In this document: one piece after another, positions 18,616-35,896 of the stretch
How the letters are laid out: every line of letters begins with the position of its first letter
Position numbering within the stretch: position 1 is the first letter of the stretch
IMG/VR virus record: IMGVR_UViG_3300017917_002374
Coordinates: 248,001 to 312,000 of that record
Strand: one strand, 5' to 3'
DNA length: 64,000 bases
Translations under genes and position numbers: made by a program
Notes under the pieces: model-generated
Told to the model about the DNA's origin: nothing
Databases searched by the model: none
The model's input: only the letters and a program-made list of their open reading frames with translations

Positions 18616-18718
18616 ACGGTATTTATATACTAAACCTTTGCAAAGGGCAGTCTAGCAGCCCAAAAATGTCAGTTCCAAATAAATATCTATAACATGATTT
18701 TTGTCAAAGGAAAATAAC

Positions 18719-21700
18719 ATGGCAACTTTAGTTTCTCCAGGTCTTAGTGTAACAGTAACCGATGAAAGCCAATATGTACCAGGCGGTCCAGGAACCGTTC
18801 CGTTGGTAATTTTAGCAACTGCACAAGACAAAACTTCACCAAGTGGTGGCACCGCTACTGGCACCACAGCAGCCAGAGCAAATACTCTACAAGCATTTGG
18901 CAGTCAGCGCGAGCTGATCACAGCCATGGGATATCCCGTATTTAAAACTGCGGCTGGCAGTCCTGTACATGGCGACGAACAAAACGAATATGGATTGCAA
19001 GCAGCTTACAGTGCAATGGGCCTTGGTAACAGATGTTTTGTACTAAGAGCTGATATTGACCTCGATCAACTTACACCTACTGGAGTAAGACCAAAAGGCA
19101 ACGTTGATGATGGTTTCTACTGGTTTGATCTTACCACATCTGACTTTGGTATATTCCAGTGGAATGCATCAACACAGACTTTTACAAAACAAACAGTAAC
19201 CGTTCTAACTTCAACCGCAGACGTAAATTCTCCTGGCGGCGCCGGAGAACCATTTACTCCAAAAGACAGTGTGGGAGAAATTGGCAGTTATGCAGTAATC
19301 GCAGTAGACGACGACAATCCTCTATTTTATAAAAATGCAGACAATGCCTGGGTAGCTGTTGGATCAAAAGATTGGCAGAAGGCCTGGCCTACTGTGCAAA
19401 GTTCATATGCAACTTATGCCGGAAATGAAGTAGCAGCAGGTACTCAAGTTACTATTAATACTGTTACTGTAACAATCACAGCAGCAGGTGCGACAGCAAC
19501 AGGAACAGAAGTAGTAACTGCAATTAATGCGGCGTTCGCTGCCAACTACGGCGACGGTATCCGTGCTGAAATTGATACCAACGGAAGACTGATCATTCGC
19601 GCTACATCAGACGCAGCAAGCGATGGTAGCACAGCTGACGGTAAAGTGGTTATTGTTGACGATGCTGGTGCTGCTGACTTAGGATTAGATGGCGGTATTG
19701 AAGCGTTTGCTCCAATTCTTGATTTTGGAAAATACACAGAGGTACCAACCTTTGCAGCGTCTGAAGCCACTCCAGCACCAACTGGTAGTATTTGGGTAAA
19801 AACTTCTGTAGTAGGCAGCGGTGCTAACTGGGTAGTAAAAAGATTCAACGCATCAACTGGTGCATTTGCTACCATGGCAGCTCCGATCTACGAAGACAAA
19901 GCATCGGCCATCTATGGACTAGATCCATTAGGCGGTGGATTTAATCTAGCGGTAGGCACACTGTATGTTGACTATTCAACACTAACTGATTTTCCTGGTA
20001 CATTTAAAATTTGGCGTCGTTACAAGAGTGGCGTAACCAAGGTTACTGGATCAGTACCTGCTAATGCAAATCCATTCACCATTGGGCATACTTTTAAACT
20101 GGCTGTGACACAGCCTGAGCAAAGTACCATTGATGAATACACATTTACTATTGCTGAAACCAGTGTAGACGGTTTTGTAAAACTAATACTTGGTAAAGCC
20201 ATTCCAAATGTGTTTGCATCAAAAGAAAGTTCAGGTGCAATCAGTATCACGCACAAAGCAGGCGGAGATATCTATCTAGTAGATACTACCGCAGGGGTTG
20301 GTAATCCATTGACCAACGCTGGTTTCACCAGCAGCACCAGTGGTATTCTTGTAGAAACAGTTGGAACATATTCAGGATCTTTACTGGCCACAAACTGGTC
20401 TGTACTAGACTACACTTACAGCACTGAAGAGCCTTATGTGGCCCCTGCTGATGGTACACTATGGTACTATGGTAGTGCTGTAGAAGCAGATGTGTTAATT
20501 TGCAGTACCACTGGCTGGAAGGGATATCGCACAGTGTCAAGTGACGCTCGCGGTTATAATCTAACTCTTACAGATCCAAATGGTCCAATTTTTTCTGCTT
20601 CAAGACCAACACTACAAAGCGACGAGACAGCTCTTGTGGCAGGCGACTTGTGGGTTGACACCAGCGATTTAGAAAACTATCCTGTGATCTACAGATACAA
20701 CGGCAGCAAGTGGGTAGCCATAGATAACACAGATACCATTACTCAAAACGGTATTCTATTCGCAGACGCACGTTGGGACGCAGATGTTGATGGCAGCGGT
20801 GACAGTATTGGTGGTATCGTTGATCCAATCAGTGGCGACCTGCCAGAGATAGCAACCATGCTGTTGAGCAACTACACTGACTTAGATTGCCCAGACTATC
20901 GTTTGTATCCACGTGGTACCATTCTATGGAACACACGTCGCAACGGATTCAACGTCAAACAATATGTAAGCCAAGCATTTACAGAAGACGCTTATCCAGA
21001 TGCAGATGCCAACAGCGGAAACAATCTGGTTGGAGAAATTCCTGACATCACAGCAACTTGGGTAACTGCTAGTGGCAACCAAGATGACGGAAGTCCTTAC
21101 ATGGGACACAAAGCTCAACGTCGTATGGTAGTCAAAGCACTACGTGCGGCAGTTGACAGCAACACACAGATACGTGAAGAACAGTTCACTTTCAATCTGA
21201 TTGCTTGCCCAGGATATCCAGAGCTGTTGTCAAACATGACAGCATTAAACAATGATCGTGCAAACACTGCATTTATCATTGGCGACACTCCATTGGATCT
21301 GGTTCCAGACACAATTGAGTTAACCAACTGGAGCAATAATGTTGCTACCACTGCTGACATCTATACAGGCCTGTTCTATCCGGCAGGGTTAACAAATGAC
21401 CTAGATGGCAACGAAGTTGTGGTACCTGCAAGTCACATGGCATTAAGAGCTTTGATTCGTAACGATCAAATTGCTTACCAGTGGTTTGCCCCAGCAGGCG
21501 CACGTCGTGGATTGATTGACAATGCCACAGCAGTAGGATATCTAGACTATACCACAGGATTGTTCACTAAGATTGGTGTACGTCAAAGTCTGCGTGACAC
21601 GCTGTACACTTTAAGAGTGAATCCTGTTGCAAACTTACCTGGTTTAGGACTGGCTATTTTTGGACAAAAGACTCGTAGTCCAATTGCACAAAGCACAGAC

Positions 21701-22021
21701 CGTATCAACGTTGCACGTCTGGTTAACTATATTAGAAGCATCCTAGGTGGCATCAGCAACAGTTATCTGTTTGAACCAAATGATAAGATCACAAGAGATC
21801 AAATCAAACAGGCAATTGAAGGTGCTATGAATGATCTAGTGGCCAAGAGAGGTGTGTACGATTACCTAGTGGTTTGTGACGAAAGCAACAACACCAGTGA
21901 TCGTATTGCAAGAAATGAATTGTATGTGGATATTGCTATTGAACCTGTAAAAGCAGCAGAGTTTATTTACATTCCAATTCGCTTGAAGAACCCAGGCACT
22001 ATCGCAGGAGCAGGCACTTAA
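18719..22021 (+). CDS. Tail sheath protein (gp18-like, ~1100 aa)
   Basis: MATLVSPGLSVTVTDES N-terminus; C-terminal WFAPAG.RRG, RDTLY..RVNP, FGQKT, DRINVARL, FEPND..TR, CDESNN...I.RNEL.VDIAIEPVKAAEFIYI. Confidence 0.95.
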   Translation: MATLVSPGLSVTVTDESQYVPGGPGTVPLVILATAQDKTSPSGGTATGTTAARANTLQAFGSQRELITAMGYPVFKTAAGSPVHGDEQNEYGLQAAYSAMGLGNRCFVLRADIDLDQLTPTGVRPKGNVDDGFYWFDLTTSDFGIFQWNASTQTFTKQTVTVLTSTADVNSPGGAGEPFTPKDSVGEIGSYAVIAVDDDNPLFYKNADNAWVAVGSKDWQKAWPTVQSSYATYAGNEVAAGTQVTINTVTVTITAAGATATGTEVVTAINAAFAANYGDGIRAEIDTNGRLIIRATSDAASDGSTADGKVVIVDDAGAADLGLDGGIEAFAPILDFGKYTEVPTFAASEATPAPTGSIWVKTSVVGSGANWVVKRFNASTGAFATMAAPIYEDKASAIYGLDPLGGGFNLAVGTLYVDYSTLTDFPGTFKIWRRYKSGVTKVTGSVPANANPFTIGHTFKLAVTQPEQSTIDEYTFTIAETSVDGFVKLILGKAIPNVFASKESSGAISITHKAGGDIYLVDTTAGVGNPLTNAGFTSSTSGILVETVGTYSGSLLATNWSVLDYTYSTEEPYVAPADGTLWYYGSAVEADVLICSTTGWKGYRTVSSDARGYNLTLTDPNGPIFSASRPTLQSDETALVAGDLWVDTSDLENYPVIYRYNGSKWVAIDNTDTITQNGILFADARWDADVDGSGDSIGGIVDPISGDLPEIATMLLSNYTDLDCPDYRLYPRGTILWNTRRNGFNVKQYVSQAFTEDAYPDADANSGNNLVGEIPDITATWVTASGNQDDGSPYMGHKAQRRMVVKALRAAVDSNTQIREEQFTFNLIACPGYPELLSNMTALNNDRANTAFIIGDTPLDLVPDTIELTNWSNNVATTADIYTGLFYPAGLTNDLDGNEVVVPASHMALRALIRNDQIAYQWFAPAGARRGLIDNATAVGYLDYTTGLFTKIGVRQSLRDTLYTLRVNPVANLPGLGLAIFGQKTRSPIAQSTDRINVARLVNYIRSILGGISNSYLFEPNDKITRDQIKQAIEGAMNDLVAKRGVYDYLVVCDESNNTSDRIARNELYVDIAIEPVKAAEFIYIPIRLKNPGTIAGAGT

Positions 22022-22798: not shown

Positions 22799-24271
22799 AT
22801 GAGTTTAAATCCTTACCTACAGCCAATTGGCACCAACAGTACTGTTCATGATTATGCTCATGCTGACCGTGTGTTTAGAACAGATGCGTTTAGATTGCAT
22901 CCTAAACTTGCGTTTCTTTACTATGTGAGAATAAATCTTGACCCTAGCTATACCATGTTCAAAGGTTTGAAGCAAAAAGAAATTGGTGCCTTGGTTAAAA
23001 CTGTTTCGTTACCAAAATTCACAGTTGATACAAAAACTCTTAATGCCTATAATCGTGCGAACCTAGTTCAGACAAAAATAAAATATGATCCGGTACAAAT
23101 AAAGTTTCACGACGACGCCGCCAATATCATACGAGAATTTTGGTACGACTACTACAGTTTCTATTATAGAGACAGTGACCATGCAACAAGTTTGTATCAA
23201 AGTGCTCACAAATACAGTGTAAGACAAACAGATCAGTGGGGATATACACTGCGCAACTCTCCTGATTCGGGAGACAAAGAACAATTTTCATCTGTAACAC
23301 AGTTGATAACTGACATTCAAATTTATAGTTTTCACGGAAAGAGATTCAGCGAAGTTACACTGCACAATCCTATAATAACTTCATTCAGACACGGAGAACA
23401 TGATTACTCTCAAGGCACAGGCATACTAGAGCACGAAATGCAAGTCAGCTTTGAAACTGTGACCTATGCAGATGGATTTTTAACTGAAGAAGAGTTTGGT
23501 GACGACATGTTGTTAAAATACGATCGCACACCAAGCGATCTTTCTCCGCAGAGTTTACAACAGGCAGGTGCAAACACAGTTTCCGGAAGAGGAACCGATC
23601 TAACGTATCAAAACGGACAAGTGGTGCGAGCTTCTCCGCAAACCAATTATTATCGCGGCGGCAGTATACAAAAACAAAATGGATTTTCTCTATTGCCTGG
23701 ATCAGGTGGTTCTCAAGTTAGAACAAACAACAGTGTGTTTGCCACTGCCGGCAAAGCAGTGCTTGGAGGCATGCTGCAATCTGCCATTCGCGGAAGAAAT
23801 CCTTTAAGTCAATTTAATGTTGCAAATGCGTCAAACTTGCTTTATCAAGCAGGCAGTGCAGTTGGTGGGCCTGCAGGGCAACGATTGATTGCATCTGGTG
23901 GGCTAGTAAAAGCAGGACAAAGTATCATGAGAAACGGAGTTGGTCCTGGAAACTTCGGCACAGTGGCGGTAGCAGTACAAGCACTTGGGCAATTAGGTAT
24001 ACGACCTGAAAACATTCTATCGTCTGGTAAAAATATTTTCACTGGTAGAGCCACTACCAATGGATCTCCTGTGGCAAAAACACAAGGAACCTTTCCAACA
24101 GCCCAGACACCAAACTTTCCTAGTGTGACAACTGCGCCAAACAATACTACTAGTAGCTATTTTTCTAATCCAAGTTATACAGACGGTAGACCTACTGTTA
24201 TAAATGACAGTAGAAATACCACACCACCAAGTAATCAAGCTAGACCTGGACAATACGGACGGTTCGTATGA
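22799..24271 (+). CDS. Tube-like baseplate protein (gp54/gp19 fold) with low-complexity C-terminus
   Basis: KTVSLPKFTV...NAYNR...KIKYDPVQIKFHDD...L.NP.ITS....DYS tube-fold pattern; TAAATA at 22777. Confidence 0.6.
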   Translation: MSLNPYLQPIGTNSTVHDYAHADRVFRTDAFRLHPKLAFLYYVRINLDPSYTMFKGLKQKEIGALVKTVSLPKFTVDTKTLNAYNRANLVQTKIKYDPVQIKFHDDAANIIREFWYDYYSFYYRDSDHATSLYQSAHKYSVRQTDQWGYTLRNSPDSGDKEQFSSVTQLITDIQIYSFHGKRFSEVTLHNPIITSFRHGEHDYSQGTGILEHEMQVSFETVTYADGFLTEEEFGDDMLLKYDRTPSDLSPQSLQQAGANTVSGRGTDLTYQNGQVVRASPQTNYYRGGSIQKQNGFSLLPGSGGSQVRTNNSVFATAGKAVLGGMLQSAIRGRNPLSQFNVANASNLLYQAGSAVGGPAGQRLIASGGLVKAGQSIMRNGVGPGNFGTVAVAVQALGQLGIRPENILSSGKNIFTGRATTNGSPVAKTQGTFPTAQTPNFPSVTTAPNNTTSSYFSNPSYTDGRPTVINDSRNTTPPSNQARPGQYGRFV

Positions 24272-25608: not shown

Positions 25609-26247
25609 ATGAAAACCTTTAAAACATACTTGCAAGAAAGTGTCAAAACCTACAGTTTCCGTGTGCGTTTGGCTGATTGTGATTGCACAGCTGAACTCAT
25701 GGACAAGATAGAACAAGCACTGTCTGCATTCAAACTGGTAGATATTACCAAACCCAAGAGCTTGCCAATAGCTCGTACCAATGAATTTTATAAACTAGGT
25801 CCAGTGGGGCGTAACAGTTTTGACATAACCACAGCATACCCTGCAAATCCTCCTCAGGTACAGCAGGCCATTCACAACTGTTGCGGAGTACCAGTTAGTC
25901 ATATCTATGTGACTTACGCGGGCGCAGACGATCAGGATGCAGCAGTAGAAGCAGCACCTGAGCACACAGATAGTGGCAAAGCTCTATTAGTGGATCCTGA
26001 ACTAAAACAAGACGACAACAACGCACAAGATCACGTGGGGCTGAAAAAAATTGATAGCCTGTTAAAAGAGCTTGAGAAGAACCGCGGCGTTCAATCTCAG
26101 TACAAAGGAATCAACGACGACATTCTCGCAAAGAGTGAGGCTAAAGAAAGCGAATCTAAAACAACCAATAGCCTGCCACAAAACAATCGCAGTCCGGTCA
26201 CAGACACTGGTAGCAAAGCAACTACTAAAAAAGTAAAGGCACTATAA
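25609..26247 (+). CDS. Hypothetical, probable internal head protein
   Basis: TAAATA at 25584; starts MKTFKTYLQES (T4 CTS-like). Confidence 0.7.
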   Translation: MKTFKTYLQESVKTYSFRVRLADCDCTAELMDKIEQALSAFKLVDITKPKSLPIARTNEFYKLGPVGRNSFDITTAYPANPPQVQQAIHNCCGVPVSHIYVTYAGADDQDAAVEAAPEHTDSGKALLVDPELKQDDNNAQDHVGLKKIDSLLKELEKNRGVQSQYKGINDDILAKSEAKESESKTTNSLPQNNRSPVTDTGSKATTKKVKAL

Positions 26248-26248
26248 C

Positions 26249-29200
26249 ATGAGCAAGCACAACGACATTTATAACATCTTGGGTAAATTGAATTCACTTA
26301 AACCTCAAGAAGAAACCAAACCCAGTATTCTAAAAGAGTTTGCTGAACCAAAGCCTGCTGATGTTGTGCAGAATCTAAATGCCAAATACCAAGAGCATAA
26401 ACAGTTGAATGAATATTTTCATTTTGACATGCCTAAAGGCAAGGATCGCGGCCCTCGCGACACAGGCACAGACGAACTAGAGCGTCGTAGCAAGCTAGGC
26501 AAAGATCCATTGGTCAAGCATGGCAAAGAATACAAAGAAAAAGATCGTTACGGTAATGGATACAAAATTGCTGGACCAAAAGGTAACTTACCCGAAGGCG
26601 ATATGGAAGAAGGACCAGCAGATCTATTGGCCGCGATTGAACAAGAAATCAATAACCCAGGTGGCAGTGTTGATAACTTGAGAGATGTCTTGAATGCTAC
26701 TTTTGGTAGCGATAGATCACCTGAATTTAAAAAAGCTCGTGCAGTCATTGGCAAGTATCTTGACTTGGTAGACAACGCTGCAATGGGTAGTGAACAAGAT
26801 GGTATTGCTCCAATGAGAGGTGGCAATATTGCTCGTCATATCCAACAATATGATCTAACTGATTATCTACAAAATGCTGCTGCTATGTTGGATAAAACAG
26901 TTAAAGGTCCAATGGACGAGAGCGGTTTGCAAGCATACCTAGGTAAAAAGAAGTACGGCGAACAAGGTATGAAGGCTCTGCAAAAGGCCGGTCGTGAAGG
27001 CGCCAGCAAAGAAAAGATGGCACAGATTCGTGCCAAGCATGACAAGCTGGACGAGATCAGTCAAGAACTTGCTGGCAATTACATGACAGCAGCAGAAAAA
27101 GACATCAAGTCAAGAAAAGAAAAAGACACATGGGATCCAAAGATCAGCAAGCGTAAAGAAGGTAAGTTCAATGCAGTACTACGCAAGACAGGTACAGTGC
27201 CTACCACAGACAATCCAACACATGGAAAGTTTATTACCAGCAAGATGGATGAAGCTGAAATGGATGAAGACATGCTGAGTCCTAAGCAGAAGAAGTTTGC
27301 AGCACTAGCTGAACCAAAAGATAAAATTACCTACGCAGACAAGATTGCAGGTGCAAAGAAAAAAGACGAAGGTAATGAATTCAGCGGCGAATTAGTAAAA
27401 GCTCGTGCGCAAGGCAAAGACAGCTTTAGTGTGGATGGTAAAGAGTATCCAGTAAAAGAAGGTTTTGAAGATCAACATGATGTTACCAACAAAGGCGAGT
27501 ACGATCAAGAAGGCGACATGGCCAAAGATGATCTCAGCACCATTGAAGATGCTGCTCGTGAGCTAGACAGTATTCTTAGTGCAGACGACAATCTGCCAGA
27601 ATGGGTACAAAGCAAGATCAACAAGGCCATGGACTATCTTGACACAGCAAGAGATTACATGAAAGCCAACACAGACGATGACAATCCTGAAATCAAAGAA
27701 GGCGAATACAAAGACTCTGTTAACAAGAGCAAGGTGCCTGCGTATCAACGCAAGGCCAAAGGTGGAGATTGGAAAGTGAGCACAAAAGATCTAGAGGACG
27801 AGGCTAGCAAGAGCCCAACTGGTCGCGCAGGATTAGAGAAACTGAAACAGCGCATGCGTGATGATGGTGTAATGGAAGGCTTCCCTACTGTAGCAGATGC
27901 CAAGGCTCGTGCAGAAAAAGAAAAAGGCACAGGCAAGTTTGATAAACAAACAACCAGTACAGGAACACGTTATACTCGCAAGCCAGAAACTTATAGCGAT
28001 GATGGCGAAGAGTCAGGTACCAGCGACGCACCTAAAAAGCGCGGCCGACCTAAGAAGCACACAGGCCCAGAGCGTGTGACCAGCAAAGCATGGAAGCACA
28101 AGGGCGGACGCAAGACCAATGAGTCTATTAAGTTGGATACATTTGTTGAAGACACAATTGGCGAACTAGATGCTCTATTATTGAGTGAAAAAGCAGTAAG
28201 CAAACAGCAGCAGAAATTCATGGGCATGGTACATGCCATGCAAAAAGGCGAGAAAGTCAAAGGCGCTAGCAAAGAATTAAAAGCAGCGGCTAAAGGCATG
28301 AGCAAGAAAGATGCCAAGGACTTTGCCAAAACCAAGCACAAAGGTTTACCGTCAAAAGTGACAGAAGGAATTAACTTTGTTGAAATGATGCGTGAGACAG
28401 ATCAGACAGTAGAAGAAATGTTAAACGAACTGCATGCTGAGCTTGATGAATACAAACGTTCAGGACAGATGGGCGACAAATTACGTGACGCTCTTGAACT
28501 GCATCGTCATAGCAAGAACAAGCTCATGGGCGAAACAAAAGAAAAAGAGAGAGACGATTTTTTCTACAATCCTGATGTGCCAGACGACCAGCAGTTGCCT
28601 GCATTACCAGACGAAGTAAAAGTTGATGTAGAGCTAGATGAACTGGCCAAGCTAGCAGGACTAGGTGAAGTCAGTCGCGGTGAATATATCAAACAACAGG
28701 ATGCACAAGCTGAACGTGCAGGCAAAGACAGTTTTAATGCATTTGGTCAAAACTTTGATACAGATCAAGTGCAAGAAGCTTCATGCAACATGACAGCGGA
28801 AGGTCAGTTCTGCCCAGAACACGGTCTAGCAGAATGTGGCAGCATGATGTATGAAAGCAAACAGTCACTAGACGAGTGCGGTGACATGGGGCCTATGGAG
28901 AAGCCAGAAAGCGGCATGAGCGTGAACACCAGTTTTGATACTAAGACCGGTCGTAAAACCATGAGCGTCACAGCCGACGGCGAAGCAGCAGAACAACTGG
29001 CACAGATGTTAAAAATGGCAGGACTGGGACATGATCATTCACACGACCACGGGCCTGAACGTAAGATTGTTATGGTACCAGAAGAAGAAGTAACTGAAGA
29101 GTTTGCAAATGAGCCAAATGAACAGTATGCAGACACACAAACAATAGTGGATGCTGGTCAAGATCTCAATCGTAAGAAAAAACAGTATGCTGACAAGCCC

Positions 29201-29293
29201 AAAGCAGGCGACAATCCAATGGCTACAGAAAATGTTCAACTAGAGGATCGTTTGGCAGCACTATATGATAGTATTAAGGTAAAATCAGAATGA
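26249..29293 (+). CDS. Highly charged multi-module protein (1014 aa), putative prohead core/internal polyprotein
   Basis: K/E/D-rich; AT-hook KKRGRPKK; DUF3008-like KAVSKQQQKFMG...KDFAKTKHKGLP; many [ILVM]xE junctions. Confidence 0.75.
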   Translation: MSKHNDIYNILGKLNSLKPQEETKPSILKEFAEPKPADVVQNLNAKYQEHKQLNEYFHFDMPKGKDRGPRDTGTDELERRSKLGKDPLVKHGKEYKEKDRYGNGYKIAGPKGNLPEGDMEEGPADLLAAIEQEINNPGGSVDNLRDVLNATFGSDRSPEFKKARAVIGKYLDLVDNAAMGSEQDGIAPMRGGNIARHIQQYDLTDYLQNAAAMLDKTVKGPMDESGLQAYLGKKKYGEQGMKALQKAGREGASKEKMAQIRAKHDKLDEISQELAGNYMTAAEKDIKSRKEKDTWDPKISKRKEGKFNAVLRKTGTVPTTDNPTHGKFITSKMDEAEMDEDMLSPKQKKFAALAEPKDKITYADKIAGAKKKDEGNEFSGELVKARAQGKDSFSVDGKEYPVKEGFEDQHDVTNKGEYDQEGDMAKDDLSTIEDAARELDSILSADDNLPEWVQSKINKAMDYLDTARDYMKANTDDDNPEIKEGEYKDSVNKSKVPAYQRKAKGGDWKVSTKDLEDEASKSPTGRAGLEKLKQRMRDDGVMEGFPTVADAKARAEKEKGTGKFDKQTTSTGTRYTRKPETYSDDGEESGTSDAPKKRGRPKKHTGPERVTSKAWKHKGGRKTNESIKLDTFVEDTIGELDALLLSEKAVSKQQQKFMGMVHAMQKGEKVKGASKELKAAAKGMSKKDAKDFAKTKHKGLPSKVTEGINFVEMMRETDQTVEEMLNELHAELDEYKRSGQMGDKLRDALELHRHSKNKLMGETKEKERDDFFYNPDVPDDQQLPALPDEVKVDVELDELAKLAGLGEVSRGEYIKQQDAQAERAGKDSFNAFGQNFDTDQVQEASCNMTAEGQFCPEHGLAECGSMMYESKQSLDECGDMGPMEKPESGMSVNTSFDTKTGRKTMSVTADGEAAEQLAQMLKMAGLGHDHSHDHGPERKIVMVPEEEVTEEFANEPNEQYADTQTIVDAGQDLNRKKKQYADKPKAGDNPMATENVQLEDRLAALYDSIKVKSE

Positions 29294-29910
29294 AAAGTCT
29301 AAAAGAATATATCGCCGAAAGCGAGTTCACTTTAGAAAATCCTGTACCAGGAGATGTGTTTGGTCTTGAACTTAGTACCGACGTGCTTATTGAAAGTGTA
29401 GTAGGAGAACTATTAGAGGATGGATCTCCTGTGGTTGAGTTAGATGCTCGTGCCATTGAGATTATGGAAAGCATGGGGTGGGTATTTGAAGATGTTGCAC
29501 CTGTGCCAACTGACAGCATAAGTCCAATACACGGTAATGCATTTGCTCCTTATCATCGTGAACATGACCCACGCGAATGGTTCCGTAAAGATGTACATGA
29601 AGAAGAGCAAGACGAAGAAGCAGAAGATGAAACTGTGACCGAAGCAGAATACAGAGGTCGCAAGGTGCCGTTAGGCAAACCAATGGCAGGCGATGTAAAA
29701 AAGAAAAAAGTTTATGTACGCAAGCCCAACGGCAGCATTGTAAAAGTAAATTTTGGCCATGGCGGAACCAGTGCCAAAAAAGCAGGTCAAAAGACCATGC
29801 GTATTAAAAAATCAAACCCTGCACGTCGCAAGAGTTTTAGAGCTAGACACAACTGTGACAATCCTGGACCACGCTGGAAAGCAAGGTACTGGAGTTGCAG
29901 AGCTTGGTAA
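29290..29910 (+). CDS. Probable internal head protein with basic C-terminal domain
   Basis: Starts MKSLKEYIAE; C-terminal EAEYRGRKV.L.KP...VKVNFG...ARRKSFRARHNC...ARYWSC..W. Confidence 0.7.
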   Translation: MKSLKEYIAESEFTLENPVPGDVFGLELSTDVLIESVVGELLEDGSPVVELDARAIEIMESMGWVFEDVAPVPTDSISPIHGNAFAPYHREHDPREWFRKDVHEEEQDEEAEDETVTEAEYRGRKVPLGKPMAGDVKKKKVYVRKPNGSIVKVNFGHGGTSAKKAGQKTMRIKKSNPARRKSFRARHNCDNPGPRWKARYWSCRAW

Positions 29911-29928: not shown

Positions 29929-30762
29929 ATGAAAAAATGGTTTTCAATTCTGCTACTATCTCTAGTGGCAACTCCAGCAGCAGCATGGGATCAATGGGCA
30001 CCGCAGCCTATTAATGCTTGTAATGTTCAAGCACCATACGGTTTTCCTAAAGCATCGCGAGGCGATCTTATGGGCAACAGTCAGGCAATATGCCGTCATG
30101 CCTATGTTACATTACATGATAATGTGGCAAAGATTCCTGTGTGGGTCAGCTACACATTGCAACCACAAAATGCATTAGGCTGTGTCCCACGTTCAAACGG
30201 ATTCATGCCAGACAACAGTTTGCCAAAAGGTAAACGTGCAGAATTGTCTGATTATGCCAAGAGTGGATATGACATTGGACATGTGGCTCCTAATGGCGAC
30301 ATGAGTTTTGATAATCGTGCAGAGTTAGAAAGTTTTTTGTTAACCAACATGTATCCACAACTGCCTGGGTTGAATCGTGGCATCTGGAAGTTGTTGGAAA
30401 CTGCAACAAGAGGCTGGGCGGTTCAAAGAGGACATGCGATAGTAGTATACGCTGGGGCTATATATGGCACTGGTGACAAAACCATTGGTGCGAATCAAGT
30501 GGTAGTACCACGTGCGTTTTATAAGATTGTAACAGACACCACTACAGGTGAAGTTATGGCATTCTTGTTCAAGCACGAAGGCGGGCAAGGCAATGACCTG
30601 ACCAAGGTACGTGCAAGTTTAGACACAGTTGAAAAACTCAGCGGTGTGGCTTTTAGTTTTCCTGCTAATGCTAGAGAAGTGCCATTGAATCAAATATGGC
30701 CAGTAGACTATGGAGCACTAACAAATGCAAAAAGAGCCAAATGCAAGGGAACCGGAGAATAA
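29929..30762 (+). CDS. DNA/RNA non-specific endonuclease (NucA/EndoG family) with signal peptide
   Basis: GYDIGHVAP (DRGH-like), SFLLTNMYPQ...NRGIW..LE, VPRAFYKI; N-terminal MKKWFSILLLSLVATPAAA. Confidence 0.9.
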   Translation: MKKWFSILLLSLVATPAAAWDQWAPQPINACNVQAPYGFPKASRGDLMGNSQAICRHAYVTLHDNVAKIPVWVSYTLQPQNALGCVPRSNGFMPDNSLPKGKRAELSDYAKSGYDIGHVAPNGDMSFDNRAELESFLLTNMYPQLPGLNRGIWKLLETATRGWAVQRGHAIVVYAGAIYGTGDKTIGANQVVVPRAFYKIVTDTTTGEVMAFLFKHEGGQGNDLTKVRASLDTVEKLSGVAFSFPANAREVPLNQIWPVDYGALTNAKRAKCKGTGE

Positions 30763-31971: not shown

Positions 31972-32502
31972 TTAGCCCGTTGCTCGCTTATCCTCAATGC
32001 CAAGATATTGATACCAACTTGGATGCTCAATATGTATAGGACGACTTTTCCACTTGTTTACCAACTGGTAATAGTCTGGTTTGTAAGGCATGCGTATGGG
32101 CTTCCATAGCTTGCTACCTTTTCTATGATTGCAGGATTTGCATGCGGTAACACTGTTTTCCCAATTGGTTTTACCGCCAGTGCTGCGTGGAATCACATGA
32201 TCCAGTGTAAGTTCGTCTCGCGGAAAAGTTTCTCTGCAATATTGGCATTGATACAAATCGCGCAGATACAGATTGCTTCTGCTGAAACGAATGTTGCGAC
32301 GTTTGGTAAAGTAGCCTTTGGTTACTGCCACAGCCGGGTAGTGAATGGTCAAATTGGAACTGCGAGCCACTAGATGGTCGTACTCTTCTAGCACAGTTAT
32401 GCGATCTAGAAACATCAGTTTAATAGCATGTTGCCAATTGATTATGCTCAAAGGAAGCACACTTATTGGCTCATAATTGCTGTTGAGTAGCAGGCAGTTC
32501 AT
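31972..32502 (-). CDS. HNH endonuclease (McrA/HNH_5-like)
   Basis: LLLNSNYEP N-terminus; RDLYQCQYC...LTLDHVIPRS.GG...WEN.VTAC..CN..KG. Confidence 0.92.
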   Translation of the reverse strand: MNCLLLNSNYEPISVLPLSIINWQHAIKLMFLDRITVLEEYDHLVARSSNLTIHYPAVAVTKGYFTKRRNIRFSRSNLYLRDLYQCQYCRETFPRDELTLDHVIPRSTGGKTNWENSVTACKSCNHRKGSKLWKPIRMPYKPDYYQLVNKWKSRPIHIEHPSWYQYLGIEDKRATG

Positions 32503-32504
32503 GT

Positions 32505-32516
32505 TAAATATATTTA
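32505..32516. promoter_or_regulatory. Palindromic divergent late promoter TAAATATATTTA
   Basis: TAAATA on both strands in the 16-bp gap between the HNH and terminase ATGs, each 8 nt from its ATG. Confidence 0.7.
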
Positions 32517-32518
32517 CT

Positions 32519-34084
32519 ATGTCAAAAAGTTTAGAAGGTGTAATTGTAAAAAAAGCTCATCAAGTAGAAAGCTACACTGAGCATCAAATTCGTGAAATAG
32601 CCAAATGTGCTGATCCTGTGACAGGTCCTCAGTACTTCATGGACAACTATTTCTACATACAGCATCCTACACAGGGTAGCATACAATACCATCCATTTGA
32701 GTACCAGGAACGCTTGATAGATACCTATCACAATTATAGATTCTCTATCAGTTTAATGCCAAGACAAACGGGGAAATCAACATCAGCTGCTGGATATTTA
32801 TTATGGTATGCAATGTTCATTCCGGACAGCACTATTCTGGTAGCTGCTCACAAATACTTGGGCGCACAGGAAATCATGCAACGTGTTCGTTATGCGTATG
32901 AAAACTGCCCGGATCATATACGAGCAGGGGTAGTAAGCTATAACAAAGGATCAATTGATTTTGATAACGGTAGTCGTATAGTTGCACAAACCACAACAGA
33001 AAACACTGGTCGTGGTATGAGTATATCTCTGTTATACTGTGACGAGTTTGCATTCGTTCGTCCCACAATCGCCAAAGACTTTTGGACCTCCATTACTCCT
33101 ACACTGGCCACTGGTGGTAAGTGTATTATCACCAGCACACCAAACAGCGACGAAGATCAGTTCGCACTGATCTGGAAAGGGGCTAACAAATGTGTAGACG
33201 AGTTTGGCAATGAAACGGAAATAGGAATTAATGGATTCAAGGCTTTTCGTAGCAACTGGAAAGAACACCCAGAGCGTGACGATGCGTGGGCAGCAGAAAT
33301 GAAAGCACAATTAGGCGAAGAACGTTTCCGCCGTGAAATGGATTGCGAGTTCTTGATTTTTGATGAAACTTTGATCAATGCAGTTACACTGTTTGAAATG
33401 GGAGGAATTGATCCTCTGGATCGGCAAGGTCAAGTGCGTTGGTATAAAAAGCCAGAAAAAGACTACACGTATGTTGTGGCGCTTGATCCTAGTTTGGGCA
33501 CAGGTGGAGACCCAGCTGCTATTGAAGTGTTTGAGTTACCTACGTTACGACAGGTTGCAGAATGGCAGCACAACAAAACTCCAGTGCAACGACAGGTTGC
33601 GATTCTTAAAGAAATTACCAGCTATCTAGCGGACACAATTGGCAGCAGCACAGAGGTGTATTATTCAGTAGAAAATAATACCTTAGGAGAGGCAGCACTG
33701 GTTGCCATTGCAGAAATTGGCGAAGAAAACATTCCTGGAATTTTTCTAAGTGAGCCACATCGTGCAGGACACAGCAAATCCTATCGTAAAGGATTTACTA
33801 CTACAAACAAGAGCAAACTAGCAGTTTGCAGCAAATTCAAAAGTCTAGTGGAAACCAAGCGAATGACCATTGCTAGTAAAAATCTCATTAGCGAGCTCAA
33901 GAACTTTGTAGCAGTGGGCACTTCGTTCAAAGCCAAAATAGGCGAAACTGATGATCTAGTGCTAGCCACGCTGCTAGTGGTACGCATGATACAGGTGCTA
34001 AAAGAGTTTGATCAACGACTGGACAATGAAGTTAGAGACACGCTTGAAGACTTTATTGCACCCATGCCCTTTATAATGATTTAG
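32519..34084 (+). CDS. Terminase large subunit (gp17-like)
   Basis: PRQTGKS Walker A, LLYCDEFAF Walker B, IITSTPN, ALDPSLGTGGD and DDLV RNase H-like nuclease motifs. Confidence 0.97.
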   Translation: MSKSLEGVIVKKAHQVESYTEHQIREIAKCADPVTGPQYFMDNYFYIQHPTQGSIQYHPFEYQERLIDTYHNYRFSISLMPRQTGKSTSAAGYLLWYAMFIPDSTILVAAHKYLGAQEIMQRVRYAYENCPDHIRAGVVSYNKGSIDFDNGSRIVAQTTTENTGRGMSISLLYCDEFAFVRPTIAKDFWTSITPTLATGGKCIITSTPNSDEDQFALIWKGANKCVDEFGNETEIGINGFKAFRSNWKEHPERDDAWAAEMKAQLGEERFRREMDCEFLIFDETLINAVTLFEMGGIDPLDRQGQVRWYKKPEKDYTYVVALDPSLGTGGDPAAIEVFELPTLRQVAEWQHNKTPVQRQVAILKEITSYLADTIGSSTEVYYSVENNTLGEAALVAIAEIGEENIPGIFLSEPHRAGHSKSYRKGFTTTNKSKLAVCSKFKSLVETKRMTIASKNLISELKNFVAVGTSFKAKIGETDDLVLATLLVVRMIQVLKEFDQRLDNEVRDTLEDFIAPMPFIMI

Positions 34085-34114: not shown

Positions 34115-35896
34115 ATGTCACGCGAAATTGAAAAAATTGCCGAAGATTTATTTGAAAAAGTTAGATCTAGATTTGAAAATGTTAACTTAGGAGACGAAGC
34201 AGCCAAGGCTACCAACGATCCTGAGAAAGCAAGATTTTTCAACTTTGACTATGTGACAAACGAAGAAAATCATGGCAATGTTACAATCAGCATAATTGAC
34301 GAAAATAATCTAAAGATTTATTTCAGTAAAAATATCAGCGACAATCTAGAAGGGCAAGAGTTAGACAACTGGTACAGTTTTCTAAAAGAGTTACGCTATT
34401 TTGCCAAACGTAATCTACTCACATTTGACACTAGAGACATCAGTCGTAGCAATCTAAACATAAAGGATCTTAAACAAGTGAGCAAAGCAGACAGTACCTT
34501 GACCACTCAAGATGTGGCAATATCAGAAAGCAGACTTTATGGCACACACATGATCAGCTACGAAAATGTTGGACCGGCCCGTATCATGATCAAACACACA
34601 GAAAGTGTGAATCCTGAACAGCGTGGTAGTAGAGCAAGACACATCAATGCAATCTATGTTGAAAATGCACAGGGCGAACGTTTTAAAATGCAACACAACA
34701 AGTTGAGCGGAGCAAGGGCCATGGCACGTCATGTGGCAGAAGGCGGTATTCCTTACGATGATGTTGGTCAGCATATCAACAGCATGATACAAGAAATGGC
34801 AGATCTTGGTCGTTTTGTGCGTGTGATGAAGCATCGTACCTTTGAAGACAACACAGCAGTCAAAATGGTAGAAGCAGCAGCCAACTATTATCAAGGCATG
34901 AATAGACAATTAAACTATCTCAAAGGTTCAAGAGCCTATAGAAATTTTGTAGAGTCATTTGAACCAAACAAACAACAACTAGACGAAGTGGATGTAAATG
35001 AATTAAAAGAACGTTTTGTTAAAAAAGTTTTTGATGATCGTATGATGGCAGCACTGCCATTGGTGAACAAGGCCTATCAGTTACAAGAACAAGCCAAACA
35101 CAAACAATTAGAAAGTGTTAAAGACATTGTTGAACACCGTGCTGATTTGCAGTTGATTGAAAATGAAGGCATGGACGAATATTTCAAGGCTCTGAGTTTC
35201 GCTCGCCCTGCAGATCTGGTAGTTCGCATTCTTGAAGACATTGCCAAACGTGGCGCAGCTATTCCAGAAGTAGCAGAATTTGCCAAACACTGGGCAGCAA
35301 ACTTCAACATGGTAAACGAAGACAGCGATAAAGAATTAAAAGAAAATCAAGCTCTGGCAGTAAAATTGGCTACGCACTACATTAGAGACCTACGTAACCT
35401 ACATGAGGGGTTACGAGTGTCTCAAACAGACTATAATCTAGTGGATTTTGACAGCGGCGAAATACTAGAAGAAGGCACTTGGGCACTACCAGAATCACCA
35501 GAAGAAGTTCAGGCTTTACAGGCATTGATGGCGCAGCCATTAGAAGTGGGCGTGGATGCTGAAAATGCTACCAGCGCACTCTACGAACTGATTGGCGACG
35601 ATGAACTGTTTGATAGACTGAATGATCTAGCAGATGCAGAAGGACCACGTGCAGATGCCAGAGACACTATCAAATACTTTTTACAACAGGAAATGCCTGG
35701 CCTAGCAGCTAAATTGAATTTTGGTGATGCAGAAATGGATCAAGCTACAAATGTCGCATCGCCTGCGCAACCCGCACCGCCTGCACAACCAACAGCAGCT
35801 AACACACCACCTGGACAGAATTCTGGCGGAGTGGTAAGCGAAGAACTACGAGCAATCGCTCGTTTGGCTGGTTTACAGTCGTTTATGGTGAAATAA
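34115..35896 (+). CDS. Conserved-type late hypothetical protein (593 aa)
   Basis: Long ORF after TAAATA (34088); ends in EELRAIARLAGL motif. Confidence 0.8.
   Translation: MSREIEKIAEDLFEKVRSRFENVNLGDEAAKATNDPEKARFFNFDYVTNEENHGNVTISIIDENNLKIYFSKNISDNLEGQELDNWYSFLKELRYFAKRNLLTFDTRDISRSNLNIKDLKQVSKADSTLTTQDVAISESRLYGTHMISYENVGPARIMIKHTESVNPEQRGSRARHINAIYVENAQGERFKMQHNKLSGARAMARHVAEGGIPYDDVGQHINSMIQEMADLGRFVRVMKHRTFEDNTAVKMVEAAANYYQGMNRQLNYLKGSRAYRNFVESFEPNKQQLDEVDVNELKERFVKKVFDDRMMAALPLVNKAYQLQEQAKHKQLESVKDIVEHRADLQLIENEGMDEYFKALSFARPADLVVRILEDIAKRGAAIPEVAEFAKHWAANFNMVNEDSDKELKENQALAVKLATHYIRDLRNLHEGLRVSQTDYNLVDFDSGEILEEGTWALPESPEEVQALQALMAQPLEVGVDAENATSALYELIGDDELFDRLNDLADAEGPRADARDTIKYFLQQEMPGLAAKLNFGDAEMDQATNVASPAQPAPPAQPTAANTPPGQNSGGVVSEELRAIARLAGLQSFMVK

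What the first reader, a model, noticed from the sequence alone, without database searches (positions are those of the whole stretch)
26249..29293. 1014-aa head protein looks like a protease-cleavable polyprotein of short modules
Seen: about 20 junctions, mostly [ILVM]-x-E followed by a small residue (LKE, LNE, LPE-G, MEE-G, MDE-S, LDE, MDE-A, VKE-G, IKE-G, VME-G, LSE, VTE-G, LGE, VQE-A, MYE-S, LDE-C). These separate 30-70-aa units, including an AT-hook (PKKRGRPKK, 28031-28057), a DUF3008-like unit (~28190-28360), a helical LPEWVQSKI unit and a CxxxxxxxxCPEHGxxxC metal-binding-like unit. Established: T4 prohead protease gp21 cleaves after (L/I)-x-E. Inference: this is a cassette of peptides packaged into the head, released by maturation cleavage and possibly ejected with the DNA (DNA condensation or anti-defence). 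It would be a modular, shufflable effector array.
Basis: partly seen in the sequence, partly recalled or inferred. Interest (0 to 1): 0.7.

Follow-up and report, generated by a model that had tools for sequence, protein, structure and literature searches.

The report
Protease-cut polyprotein of phage head modules
A 1014-residue protein of an uncultured 355-kb T4-like jumbo phage reads as about a dozen small internal-head-protein modules joined by cleavage sites for the phage's own T4-type prohead protease; I found no description of this arrangement, and all the evidence is computational.

Summary
The ORF, the listed motifs and the named units are all at the stated coordinates. [ILVM]xE followed by a small residue occurs 12 times against 3.8 expected (z 4.0-4.6). 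Among 362 ORFs of the genome only the scaffold protein is more enriched. The genome encodes a T4 gp21-type prohead protease. Its scaffold and major capsid protein carry the same motif at the expected places.

Across 120 homologues the motif is 3.3-fold enriched in every member. The junction Glu residues are 70-100% conserved. Eleven of 12 sites lie in low-confidence linkers of an AlphaFold beads-on-a-string model. Homology breakpoints pile up at the sites.

Two modules (DUF3008, LPEWVQSKI) also exist as stand-alone small phage genes. Some of these carry a T4-type capsid targeting leader that ends in xxE exactly where the polyprotein junction lies. Both flanking genes start with T4-like targeting leaders.

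Mass spectrometry found the gene at the same position in Pseudomonas phage PA5oct, and the cyanophage S-SCSM1 relatives, in purified virions.

Best reading: a prohead-targeted polyprotein of internal-protein modules cut by the maturation protease. Cleavage, head location, ejection and any anti-defence role are untested. It is a new variant of a known kind.

The parts
26249..29293 (+). 1014-aa modular polyprotein ORF. Its start overlaps the upstream stop, and its stop overlaps the downstream start (ATGA).
   Evidence: 1676 metagenomic homologues
26249..26413 (+). Conserved N-terminal leader, residues 1-55 (M1, I7, Y8, I10, L11, K13, L14, L17, P19 at least 90% conserved). It ends at LNE55. It is not a T4-type targeting sequence and may be a different targeting helix.
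   Evidence: 76% of homologues align to it
26588..26611 (+). Junctions LPE|G (residues 114-116) and MEE|G (119-121)
   Evidence: E conserved 84% and 96%; in a pLDDT<50 linker; alignment breakpoints at residue 121
26612..26920 (+). Helical-bundle module, residues 122-224, ending in junction MDE|S (222-224). A variable module, aligned in 13% of homologues. Weak Ntox14-like Pfam match.
27047..27055 (+). LDE|I (residues 267-269). It is a recurrent homology breakpoint, but AlphaFold places it inside a helix, so cleavage is uncertain.
27245..27253 (+). Junction MDE|A (residues 333-335)
27254..27460 (+). Module, residues 336-404: a degenerate KIAGA helix plus a GKDSF beta-hairpin. It is an internal paralogue of residues 786-843 and ends in junction VKE|G (402-404).
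   Evidence: z 4.8
27461..27700 (+). Acidic helical-hairpin module with LPEWVQSKI, residues 405-484, net charge -16. It ends in junction IKE|G (482-484). It also occurs as a stand-alone gene behind a targeting leader.
27869..27877 (+). Junction VME|G (residues 541-543). The only strict site that does not lie in a pLDDT<50 segment.
28031..28057 (+). AT-hook PKKRGRPKK, residues 595-603 (K596, G599, R600, P601 at least 90% conserved)
28181..28366 (+). Junction LSE|K (residues 645-647), the DUF3008 module (648-706, net charge +11, three helices), and junction VTE|G (704-706)
28604..28777 (+). Best-conserved module, residues 786-843: an LDELAKLAGLG helix, a second helix and a GKDSF hairpin (pLDDT above 90). 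It ends in junction VQE|A (841-843). The LAG motif matches the scaffold C-terminal tail.
28784..28879 (+). Cys/His cluster C846, C855, H858, C863, C877, interleaved with junctions LAE|C (860-862), MYE|S (867-869) and LDE|C (874-876). E869 and E876 are invariant.
   Evidence: the same C..CP.HG motif is in PA5oct gp281 and the DSL-LC02 protein
28916..29029 (+). Beta-hairpin plus helix unit, residues 890-927, carrying the second LAG motif (LKMAGLG)
29207..29290 (+). Conserved C-terminal GDNP motif (N989 and P990 invariant) and terminal helix, residues 997-1010. A similar motif occurs at the C-terminus of PA5oct gp281.
25609..26247 (+). Upstream 212-aa gene with a T4-type capsid targeting leader, MKTFKTYLQE|S. 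Its PA5oct homologue gp282 was detected in virions by MS.
29290..29910 (+). Downstream 206-aa gene with a T4-type leader, MKSLKEYIAE|S, and 4 strict sites in all. It is an acidic part followed by a basic C-terminal module after VTE|A, that is, a mini-polyprotein. It ranks third in the genome for motif enrichment.

Best explanation
The gene encodes a polyprotein of T4-type internal head proteins.

Shown: it is a string of at least 10 small folded modules (about 20-140 aa) joined by flexible linkers. Each linker carries a conserved hydrophobic-x-Glu|small motif. This is the specificity known for T4 gp21, and the same motif is seen in this phage's own scaffold and capsid propeptide.

Inferred mechanism:
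1. The precursor is made late, together with the neighbouring virion genes.
2. It is built into the prohead core. Candidate anchors are its conserved N-terminal leader and its repeated (K/R)LAG(L/I) helices, which copy the extreme C-terminal tail of the scaffold protein.
3. During maturation the gp21-like protease cuts it at about 12-15 junctions.
4. Basic fragments (AT-hook segment; DUF3008, +11) probably stay with the packaged DNA. Strongly acidic fragments (-11 to -17) either leave, as scaffold peptides do, or remain as counter-ions.

In smaller T4-like phages the same modules are encoded as separate small genes, each with its own N-terminal targeting leader cut at xxE. The polyprotein is the fused form of such a gene array, and the module set turns over quickly between relatives. 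What the released modules do afterwards is not known.
For: 1. Motif statistics. There are 12 strict sites against 3.8 expected, z 4.0-4.6. This ranks second of 362 ORFs, behind the scaffold. T4 controls behave the same way: gp22 has 10 against 2.5 expected, and the pattern marks the LTE|A motif at residue 65 of gp23, which from my own knowledge of T4 is the known gp23 maturation site.

2. Enzyme. A Peptidase_S77 gene lies at genome 236195-236833 (PF03420 match E 3.8e-28). It is 37% identical to T4 gp21 and keeps the HP and GVSSRG motifs. The scaffold has 12 sites. The capsid protein N-terminus has LLE|S, LLE|G and LAE|S.

3. Conservation. All 120 family members show an excess (10.5 against 3.1 per protein). 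Junction Glu residues are 67-97% conserved, against 40-65% identity in the flanks. E869 and E876 are invariant.

4. Accessibility. Eleven of 12 strict sites lie in pLDDT<50 linkers, which make up 36% of residues (P = 5e-4). Motif copies inside helices are the unconserved ones.

5. Modularity.
- Homology breakpoints within 3 aa of a site: 29% against 8.4% for the query, and 22% against 8.4% family-wide. Control motifs give 1-9%.
- Modules are present in only 13-83% of homologues.
- There is an internal duplication.
- Zn-ribbon modules sit at different positions in different members.
- 429 of 5089 protein pairs have non-collinear alignments.

6. Stand-alone modules.
- Of 68 small DUF3008 proteins, 11 have a leader ending [ILVM]xE directly before the module, for example MKINEVIAE|KAVSK and MRYAEFITE|KAKSK. 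The polyprotein has LLLSE|KAVSK at the same point.
- Of 27 LPEWVQSKI proteins, 16 have such a leader, for example MKNFREFVELIQE|KDKGEYD.
- T4 IPII and IPIII start MKTYQEFIAE|A. The first 10 residues of IPIII suffice for head targeting (PMC9026906).

7. Context.
- The only two ORFs in the genome that fit a strict targeting-leader pattern are the two flanking genes.
- Synteny and leaders are kept in two related contigs of 351 and 374 kb.
- PA5oct has the same gene order, and the protein in this slot (gp281) is marked as detected by ESI-MS/MS in virions.
- S-SCSM1 gp92 and gp93 (DUF3008) are annotated as virion proteins, from MS of CsCl-purified particles.
Against: - There is no protein-level evidence for this phage: no proof of expression, head location or cleavage.
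- The polyprotein itself lacks a T4-type N-terminal targeting sequence.
- Similarity to the cultured-phage counterpart PA5oct gp281 is only at motif level (hhalign E 0.0015, probability 17%). Motif enrichment in cultured relatives is weak: 5 against 1.9 expected, and 4 against 1.7.
- The gene lies about 36 kb from the head-gene cluster, among tail, neck and packaging genes.
- The coincidence of breakpoints and sites could partly arise because both fall in poorly conserved linkers.
- Three sites lie inside a conserved Cys/His cluster. If that cluster binds metal, they could be protected from the protease.
- The complex prediction of the LAG module with the capsid protein gave no answer.
- The protein's net charge is negative (-28), so it is not a simple DNA-neutralising protein.
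Confidence: 0.65

Rival explanations
1. It is a scaffold-like prohead-core assembly protein, functionally like T4 gp22, gp67 and gp68. It helps build or size the very large head, is then shredded by the protease, and its fragments are expelled. On this reading the modules have no role after assembly.
For: - Site density and enrichment resemble the scaffold.
- It has long acidic segments.
- It shares the LAG tail motif with the scaffold, and that motif is conserved in PA5oct-like and RaK2 scaffolds.
- It is a conserved, single-copy, syntenic gene with conserved termini.
- T4 core proteins are cut into multiple fragments that mostly leave the head (PMC9026906).
Against: - The modules are not coiled coil. 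They are small independent folds.
- The modules also exist as separate leader-bearing genes, which is the T4 internal-protein pattern.
- The DUF3008 protein of S-SCSM1 and PA5oct gp281 were found in mature purified virions.
- Rapid gain and loss of middle modules (lengths 562-1166 aa) fits poorly with a size-determining role.
Confidence: 0.17
2. It is an uncleaved, largely disordered virion or DNA-associated protein. The xxE motifs are a by-product of linker composition and are not protease sites.
For: - There is no direct cleavage evidence.
- 36% of the model is low-confidence.
- PA5oct gp281 is listed simply as a structural protein.
- Enrichment in cultured relatives is weak.
Against: - Controls with non-hydrophobic P3, Asp at P1, or the reversed motif are neither enriched nor associated with breakpoints.
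- The enrichment survives local-composition shuffles.
- The junction Glu and the small P1' residue are more conserved than their surroundings.
- The same junction is the end of a targeting leader in stand-alone genes.
Confidence: 0.1
3. It is a tail tape measure or another internal tail protein, as its position after the tail tube genes might suggest.
For: - It lies downstream of the sheath and tube genes.
- Weak Foldseek matches to tape measure proteins, E 0.007-0.07, probability at most 0.14.
Against: - It has 32% K, D and E and no hydrophobic or Gly-rich segments.
- The model is beads on a string, not a long helix.
- Family length varies from 562 to 1166 aa, while the sheath length in relatives stays at 1101-1108 aa. 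That is incompatible with a length ruler.
- A better tape measure candidate lies just upstream of the portal: 1049 aa, with Gly- and Ala-rich hydrophobic segments.
- The flanking genes carry head-targeting leaders.
Confidence: 0.02

Closest known systems
T4 internal proteins IPI, IPII, IPIII and Alt, with the capsid targeting sequence
   Same: - Small proteins are delivered into the prohead behind a leader removed by gp21 after (L/I)xE.
- The flanking genes and the stand-alone versions of two modules have leaders very like MKTYQEFIAE|A.
- Module content is diverse and turns over quickly.
   Different: - Here about a dozen modules are fused in one chain and separated by internal sites, rather than one leader per protein.
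- The polyprotein's own N-terminus is not a T4-type leader.
- There is no sequence similarity to any T4 internal protein.
T4 prohead core proteins gp22, gp67 and gp68
   Same: They are cut by gp21 into many fragments, they are motif-dense, and they are partly very acidic.
   Different: - This protein is not coiled coil and not encoded next to the protease.
- Its modules are independent folds that also exist as separate genes.
- It is 1014 aa, against 80-269 aa.
Inner-body and ejection proteins of phiKZ, 201phi2-1 and SPN3US
   Same: They are jumbo-phage head-internal proteins processed by a gp21-related protease after xxE. Their propeptides contain several sites (PMC9026906; PMC10052503).
   Different: - Those proteins lose one long propeptide at S/A-x-E and keep one mature chain.
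- They are not arrays of independently occurring modules.
- They belong to a different phage lineage and show no homology.
Polyvalent proteins (Iyer, Burroughs, Anand, de Souza, Aravind 2017, PMC5512222)
   Same: They combine many unrelated domains in one phage polypeptide, are predicted to be packaged in the head, and are processed into units, with extensive domain mosaicism.
   Different: - Polyvalent proteins are built from enzymatic and effector domains and LPD domains, and are thought to be cut by an embedded Zn-metallopeptidase (MPTase).
- Here the modules are tiny and non-enzymatic.
- No MPTase is present.
- Cutting is predicted to be done in trans by the prohead protease.
Pseudomonas phage PA5oct gp281 (locus tag PQE65_gp281) and Synechococcus phage S-SCSM1 gp92/gp93
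   Same: - PA5oct gp281 sits in the same slot between the leader-bearing 200-aa gene and the large terminase gene. It shares the LAG helix, the C..CP.HG knuckle and the GDN C-terminal motif, and was detected in virions by MS.
- S-SCSM1 gp92 shares the N-terminal M.HLNDI motif and the KPDFLD.DKDG module. gp93 is a stand-alone DUF3008 protein. Both are annotated as virion proteins.
   Different: - They are much shorter (498, 520 and 69 aa).
- They show only motif-level similarity.
- Their site enrichment is weak.
- Neither has been described as a polyprotein or as cleaved.

Membership tests
Substrate of a T4 gp21-type (Peptidase S77) prohead protease | A gp21-type protease is encoded by the same phage | tested here: met
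   PF03420 match E 3.8e-28, over the curated cut-off. It is 37% identical to T4 gp21 and keeps the HP and GVSSRG motifs.
Substrate of a T4 gp21-type (Peptidase S77) prohead protease | Cleavage motif (L/I)-x-E present, accessible and conserved | tested here: met
   12 strict sites against 3.8 expected. Eleven of 12 lie in predicted linkers. Junction E is 67-100% conserved. The same motif is in the phage's scaffold and capsid propeptide.
Substrate of a T4 gp21-type (Peptidase S77) prohead protease | Actual cleavage during head maturation | not testable with these tools
   Needs virion MS or an in vitro protease assay.
T4-type internal head protein (IP) | N-terminal 10-residue capsid targeting sequence of the MKTYQEFIAE type | tested here: not met
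   The polyprotein starts MSKHNDIYNILGKL. The feature is met by both flanking genes and by stand-alone versions of two of its modules.
T4-type internal head protein (IP) | Located inside the capsid and ejected with the DNA | not testable with these tools
   Only indirect evidence: the PA5oct and S-SCSM1 relatives are annotated as detected in whole virions by MS.
Polyvalent proteins (Iyer et al. 2017) | Several (2-15) distinct domains in one phage-encoded polypeptide, in a late or structural gene context | tested here: met
   At least 10 modules, set among virion genes.
Polyvalent proteins (Iyer et al. 2017) | Characteristic enzymatic, effector or LPD domains and an embedded MPTase peptidase | tested here: not met
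   Pfam finds only DUF3008 and a sub-threshold Ntox14 match in the query. Relatives add Zn-ribbon, DUF5661 and DUF6321 matches. No peptidase was found.
Prohead scaffold or core protein (gp22, gp67, gp68) | Homology to gp22-type scaffolds, a coiled-coil build, and a gene next to the protease and capsid genes | tested here: not met
   A separate scaffold gene (366 aa, phrog_10922) lies between the protease and the capsid gene. The query has no scaffold PHROG or Pfam match. The model is not coiled coil.
Tail tape measure protein | Length tied to tail length; a long helical protein with hydrophobic or Gly-rich segments | tested here: not met
   Family length is 562-1166 aa with a constant sheath length. 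Composition and model differ from a tape measure. Another candidate exists.
DUF3008 (PF11450), module level only | Full-length match to the 57-position profile | tested here: inconclusive
   The query matches profile positions 1-57 at residues 649-704, but with 18.8 bits against a cut-off of 24. Homologue P0045 reaches 29 bits. PHROG families match at 5e-16. It is 56-88% identical to named DUF3008 proteins. In substance this is a member.
AT-hook, motif level only | R-G-R-P core flanked by basic residues; binding to the minor groove of AT-rich DNA | tested here: inconclusive
   The sequence motif is present and conserved. DNA binding is not testable here.

The most novel reading that the evidence does not exclude
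Jumbo and marine T4-like phages keep a shared pool of head-packaged mini-proteins. They exchange them freely between two formats: single genes with a targeting leader, and long polyproteins in which the protease site doubles as the module boundary. On this reading the polyprotein is a cleavage-released, combinatorially evolving cargo array. It is anchored in the prohead by helices that mimic the scaffold tail, and at least some modules are injected with the DNA to act on host DNA or defences.
Probability: 0.3. Interest if true: 0.8.

Novelty: new variant of a known kind. Interest (0 to 1): 0.62.

Why it matters
- It would extend the T4 internal-protein and capsid-targeting paradigm to a very large, uncultured group of jumbo and aquatic phages: more than 1600 homologues, on contigs up to 374 kb.
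- It would show that a prohead protease can act as a polyprotein-processing enzyme for cargo, as proteases do in RNA viruses.
- It gives simple sequence rules (leader, xxE junction, LAG helix) for finding head-packaged proteins in metagenomes.
- It names concrete small modules (DUF3008, LPEWVQSKI, the KLAGL/GKDSF unit, the AT-hook piece) whose roles in DNA packing or early infection can now be tested.
- It suggests natural junctions and anchors for loading foreign proteins into large capsids.

Tried and rejected
- Megablast of the gene against 50,697 phage records found no match.
- A sequence search of the PDB found nothing.
- Foldseek of the whole model against BFVD and PDB found only unnamed family members or insignificant helical matches.
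- The DUF3008 module was modelled alone (pLDDT 75). In PDB it gave only insignificant cytochrome-c-like matches, and in AlphaFold DB only DUF3008 proteins, so no function could be read from the fold.
- The ESM Atlas search with the LAG module gave unnamed viral clusters.
- The complex prediction of the capsid protein with residues 786-843 returned 'no answer'. I do not use it either way.
- The T4 late-promoter consensus TATAAATA is not enriched in the window: 3 against 2.2 expected.
- Cutting all homologues at the motif and clustering the fragments by single linkage collapsed into one cluster and was abandoned.
- A BLAST self-comparison found nothing. A Smith-Waterman comparison of modules with shuffles found one internal duplication.
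- No paralogue of any module exists elsewhere in the genome.
- The PA5oct paper and preprint hold no per-protein peptide data in the library.
- No paper mentions DUF3008.
- No paper was found that describes such a polyprotein.
- I tried to check for a protease gene in the contigs carrying stand-alone modules, but those records are not held.
- The tape measure reading was considered and rejected (see rivals).


Full report
**What is there**

Window 26249-29293 (+) is an intact ATG-started ORF of 1014 aa. Its start overlaps the stop of the upstream ORF, and its stop overlaps the start of the downstream ORF. The protein has 32% K, E and D and only four Cys.

The window lies at 248001-312000 of a 354,959-bp virus record with direct terminal repeats. 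The surrounding genes are those of a T4-like myovirus: neck proteins, a 1106-aa sheath, a tube and a 490-aa tube paralogue, a gp4-like head completion protein, the large terminase, gp32, UvsX and UvsY.

By the large terminase, the nearest cultured phages are the Pseudomonas jumbo phage PA5oct group (54% identity), Sinorhizobium phage Phosso and the RaK2-like Erwinia phages.

- [ILVM]xE occurs 29 times against 17.0 in composition-matched shuffles (z 3.35).
- The stricter [ILVM]xE followed by G, A, S or C occurs 12 times against 3.8 (z 4.3).
- [ILVM]xD, Ex[ILVM], [ILVM]E and [SAG]xE are at expectation.
- Shuffling only within 30-, 50- or 100-residue windows leaves z at 4.0-4.6.

The AT-hook, the DUF3008 match (the full 57-position profile at residues 649-704), the LPEWVQSKI helix and the Cys/His cluster are at the stated places.

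**The phage has the enzyme, and its known substrates carry the same motif**

About 36 kb upstream lies a T4-order head module: a tape-measure-like 1049-aa gene, the portal, a very acidic 303-aa protein, a 212-aa Peptidase_S77 protease, a 366-aa scaffold, and the major capsid protein.

The protease matches PF03420 at E 3.8e-28 and is 37% identical to T4 gp21.
- The scaffold carries 12 strict sites against 2.2 expected.
- The capsid protein N-terminus carries LLE|S, LLE|G and LAE|S.
- The protease itself carries three strict sites.

The same pattern applied to T4 gives 10 sites against 2.5 expected in gp22. It also marks the LTE|A motif at residue 65 of gp23, which from my own knowledge of T4 is the known maturation site.

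T4 gp21 cuts after L/I-x-E and shreds gp22, gp67 and gp68 into several fragments (PMC9026906).

Ranked over 362 ORFs of this genome, the scaffold is first for motif excess (p 3.7e-6). The 1014-aa protein is second (5.5e-4). The ORF immediately downstream of it is third.

**The family**

The protein has 1676 relatives at E of at most 0.001 in metagenomes. The relatives sit on contigs up to 374 kb.

In the 120 best relatives:
- Every protein has a motif excess (mean 10.5 against 3.1).
- Query-anchored alignments show the junction Glu conserved at 67-97% and the small P1' residue at 54-97%, while the flanks are 40-65% identical.
- In a 92-sequence alignment E869 and E876 are invariant, and E706, E843 and E862 are at least 90% conserved.
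- Motif copies that are poorly conserved (LKE28, LAE355, MRE716, VEE723, LNE727, MGE762, LGE807) are mostly inside predicted helices.

**Structure**

An AlphaFold2 model built with that alignment (mean pLDDT 60) is a chain of small confident units separated by low-confidence linkers. The confident units are:
- a helical bundle, residues 122-220;
- a helical hairpin, 224-292;
- a helix plus beta-hairpin, 377-401;
- a helical hairpin, 423-475;
- three helices, 652-693;
- a helical unit, 710-759;
- a helix-helix-hairpin, 794-837, with pLDDT above 90;
- a hairpin plus helix, 890-923.

Eleven of the 12 strict sites fall in segments with pLDDT below 50, which make up 36% of the chain (P = 5e-4 by random placement).

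**Modules come and go at the junctions**

Pairwise alignments to homologues end again and again at residues 55, 121, 220-228, 269, 332-337, 404, 484, 541 and 870. These are the positions of LNE, MEE, MDE, LDE, MDE, VKE, IKE, VME and MYE.
- 29% of 558 internal alignment ends lie within 3 residues of a strict site, against 8.4% for random site placement (the maximum of 5000 trials was 25%). Control motifs give 1-9%.
- Over all pairs of the 120 proteins the figures are 22% against 8.4%.
- Individual modules are present in 13% to 83% of relatives.
- Family length ranges from 562 to 1166 aa.
- Residues 336-404 and 786-843 are internal paralogues (z 4.8).
- Zn-ribbon modules sit near residue 240 in some members and near 640-870 in others.
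- 429 of 5089 protein pairs have non-collinear alignments.

One caveat applies. Alignment ends and cleavage motifs both favour weakly conserved linkers, so part of the coincidence is expected from a modular build alone.

**The strongest evidence: the same modules as separate genes behind a targeting leader**

Searching with residues 644-708 alone returned 68 small proteins of 48-113 aa.
- 48 begin directly at the module (MP[AS]x-SKAQQ...).
- 11 have a leader that ends in [ILVM]xE immediately before it, for example MKINEVIAE|KAVSK, MRYAEFITE|KAKSK and MIKLKDILLSE|KAVSK.
- The polyprotein has LLLSE|KAVSK at the same point.

Searching with residues 405-484 returned 27 small proteins.
- 16 have such a leader just before the conserved GEYD start of the module, for example MKNFREFVELIQE|KDKGEYD and MKSFGAYLNE|KDKGEYD.
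- The polyprotein has PVKE|GFEDQHDVTNKGEYD.

These leaders closely resemble the T4 IPII/IPIII leader MKTYQEFIAE|A. The first ten residues of IPIII suffice for packaging into the T4 head. Positions 4 and 7 matter for targeting, and positions 8 and 10 for cleavage (PMC9026906).

In a 164-kb phage contig, several adjacent small genes each begin with such a leader. In a 112-kb contig a leader-bearing DUF3008 gene carries a second module after VDE|K.

A freshwater cyanophage, DSL-LC02, has a 665-aa protein directly after its small terminase gene. It combines the Cys knuckle, DUF5661, the LPAWVQSKI module and DUF6321, separated by VKE|G, VVE|G and VSE|A.

**Context**

Only two ORFs of the genome fit a strict T4-type leader pattern, and they are the two genes flanking the polyprotein: MKTFKTYLQE|S at 25609 and MKSLKEYIAE|S at 29290.
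- Gene order and leaders are the same in two related contigs of 351 and 374 kb.
- PA5oct has the same order: sheath, tube, tube paralogue, 151-aa protein, head completion, 168-aa protein, 200-aa gp282, 498-aa gp281, large terminase.
- gp282 and gp281 are annotated as structural proteins found by ESI-MS/MS (paper PMC7318152).
- gp282 is a detectable homologue of the upstream ORF (E 8e-7).
- gp281 shares only motifs with the query: an N-terminal INDILRLAGV, LDEISKLAGI, C..CPVHG, and a C-terminal GDN...L..L. The profile comparison is weak (E 0.0015, probability 17%). I therefore call it a positional counterpart, not a proven orthologue.
- In cyanophage S-SCSM1, gp93 is a stand-alone DUF3008 protein. 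gp92 shares the family's N-terminal motif and a 24-residue KPDFLD.DKDG module (E 6e-7). Both are annotated as virion proteins, from MS of CsCl-purified particles (PMC9602691).

**A second recurring signal**

The motif (K/R)LAG(L/I) preceded by an amphipathic helix occurs:
- at the extreme C-terminus of this phage's scaffold (...IKRLAGLN);
- at the C-terminus of the 593-aa virion protein ORF at 34115-35896;
- twice in the polyprotein.

It is present in 117 of 120 family members. It closes the scaffold of the PA5oct-like phage Ettore (...LRRLAGIK) and, in degenerate form, the scaffold of RaK2. Five stand-alone LPEWVQSKI proteins end in ...DE|LxRIKQLGG.

I infer that this is a prohead-anchoring helix shared by scaffold and cargo. 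The one test available, a complex prediction with the capsid protein, gave no answer, so this remains a hypothesis.

**What the fragments might do**

Cutting at the 15 best-supported sites gives two classes of fragment.
- Basic pieces: +3 to +5 for most, and +11 for DUF3008. The 544-647 piece holds the conserved AT-hook.
- Strongly acidic pieces: -6, -16, -17 and -11.

By analogy with T4, basic pieces would stay with the DNA, and acidic ones would leave or act as counter-ions. This is inference only. No module has a recognisable enzymatic or inhibitor fold. Ejection, DNA condensation and anti-defence roles are untested.

**Comparison with what is known**

The mechanism is that of T4 head maturation: gp21, the targeting leader, the internal proteins and the shredded core proteins. 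There are parallels in the phiKZ and SPN3US inner-body proteins.

The idea of many functions fused in one packaged, processed phage protein is that of polyvalent proteins (PMC5512222). Those are enzymatic, and their own metallopeptidase domain is thought to cut them; no such domain is found here.

I found no description of a phage polyprotein whose module boundaries are prohead-protease sites, nor of this family. I therefore rate it a new variant of a known kind. Confidence is about 0.65 for the polyprotein-substrate model and about 0.3 for the wider cargo-array reading.

Noticed in passing
window 29290-29910 (+): A 206-aa ORF with a T4-like leader (MKSLKEYIAE|S) and four strict sites in all. 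It has an acidic first half, then a basic C-terminal module after VTE|A. That module matches phrog_7595, recurs at the end of a stand-alone LPEWVQSKI protein (P0214) and resembles the C-terminus of the cyanophage DSL-LC02 protein. It looks like a two-part mini-polyprotein.
   Followed up: partly
window 25609-26247 (+): A 212-aa ORF with the leader MKTFKTYLQE|S. It is a homologue of PA5oct gp282 (E 8e-7), which was detected in virions. The leader is conserved in relatives (MKTFKKYLTE, MKAFKAYLTE).
   Followed up: partly
L005:8745-9845 (genome 236844-237944); window 34115-35896: The scaffold and a 593-aa virion-protein ORF both end in an (R)LAGL motif that also occurs inside the polyprotein. The scaffold tail motif is conserved in PA5oct-like phages and, in degenerate form, in RaK2. 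It may be a shared prohead-anchoring signal.
   Followed up: partly
window 26612-26920 (residues 122-224): The helical module has a weak Pfam match to Ntox14 ('novel toxin 14'): 15.8 bits in the query and 25.5 bits in homologue P0005, against a cut-off of 25. It is probably just a helical bundle, and nothing else points to a toxin.
   Followed up: no
window 29929-30762 (+): A DNA/RNA non-specific endonuclease (PF01223, E 8e-41) with a clear N-terminal signal peptide. A phage-encoded secreted or periplasmic nuclease sits right after the internal-protein cluster, and the arrangement is conserved in related contigs.
   Followed up: no
window 31972-32502 (-) and 32477-34084 (+): An HNH endonuclease gene abuts and overlaps the TTG start of the large terminase gene. 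In related contig L007 the terminase is called as several pieces (305, 208 and 357 aa), which suggests homing-endonuclease or intron traffic at this locus.
   Followed up: no
L011:5711-8029 (164-kb metagenomic phage contig): A run of adjacent small genes each begins with a T4-like targeting leader (..YIAE|G, MKNFREFVELIQE|K, MKSFKQF.., MKTFIKHNLHE|G, MKTFKSHMTE|H). This is the unfused counterpart of the polyprotein.
   Followed up: partly
L005:1927-5076 (genome 230026-233175): A 1049-aa ORF just upstream of the portal has Gly- and Ala-rich hydrophobic stretches and an early MNE|S site, but no PHROG match. It is the likely tape measure protein.
   Followed up: no
window 18701-22021 and 22799-24271: The tail sheath is unusually long (1106 aa, TTG start, weak flagellin-IN-like insert). 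There is a second, 490-aa tube-like paralogue, as in PA5oct.
   Followed up: no
genome 28988-30292, 167856-168200, 343763-344860, 349072-349452 (outside the window): Further ORFs have looser leader-like starts (MRYQDFLAE|G, MSELDQLLAE|A, MRVREVILE|G, MLIRELHE|S). They may be additional head-targeted proteins.
   Followed up: no
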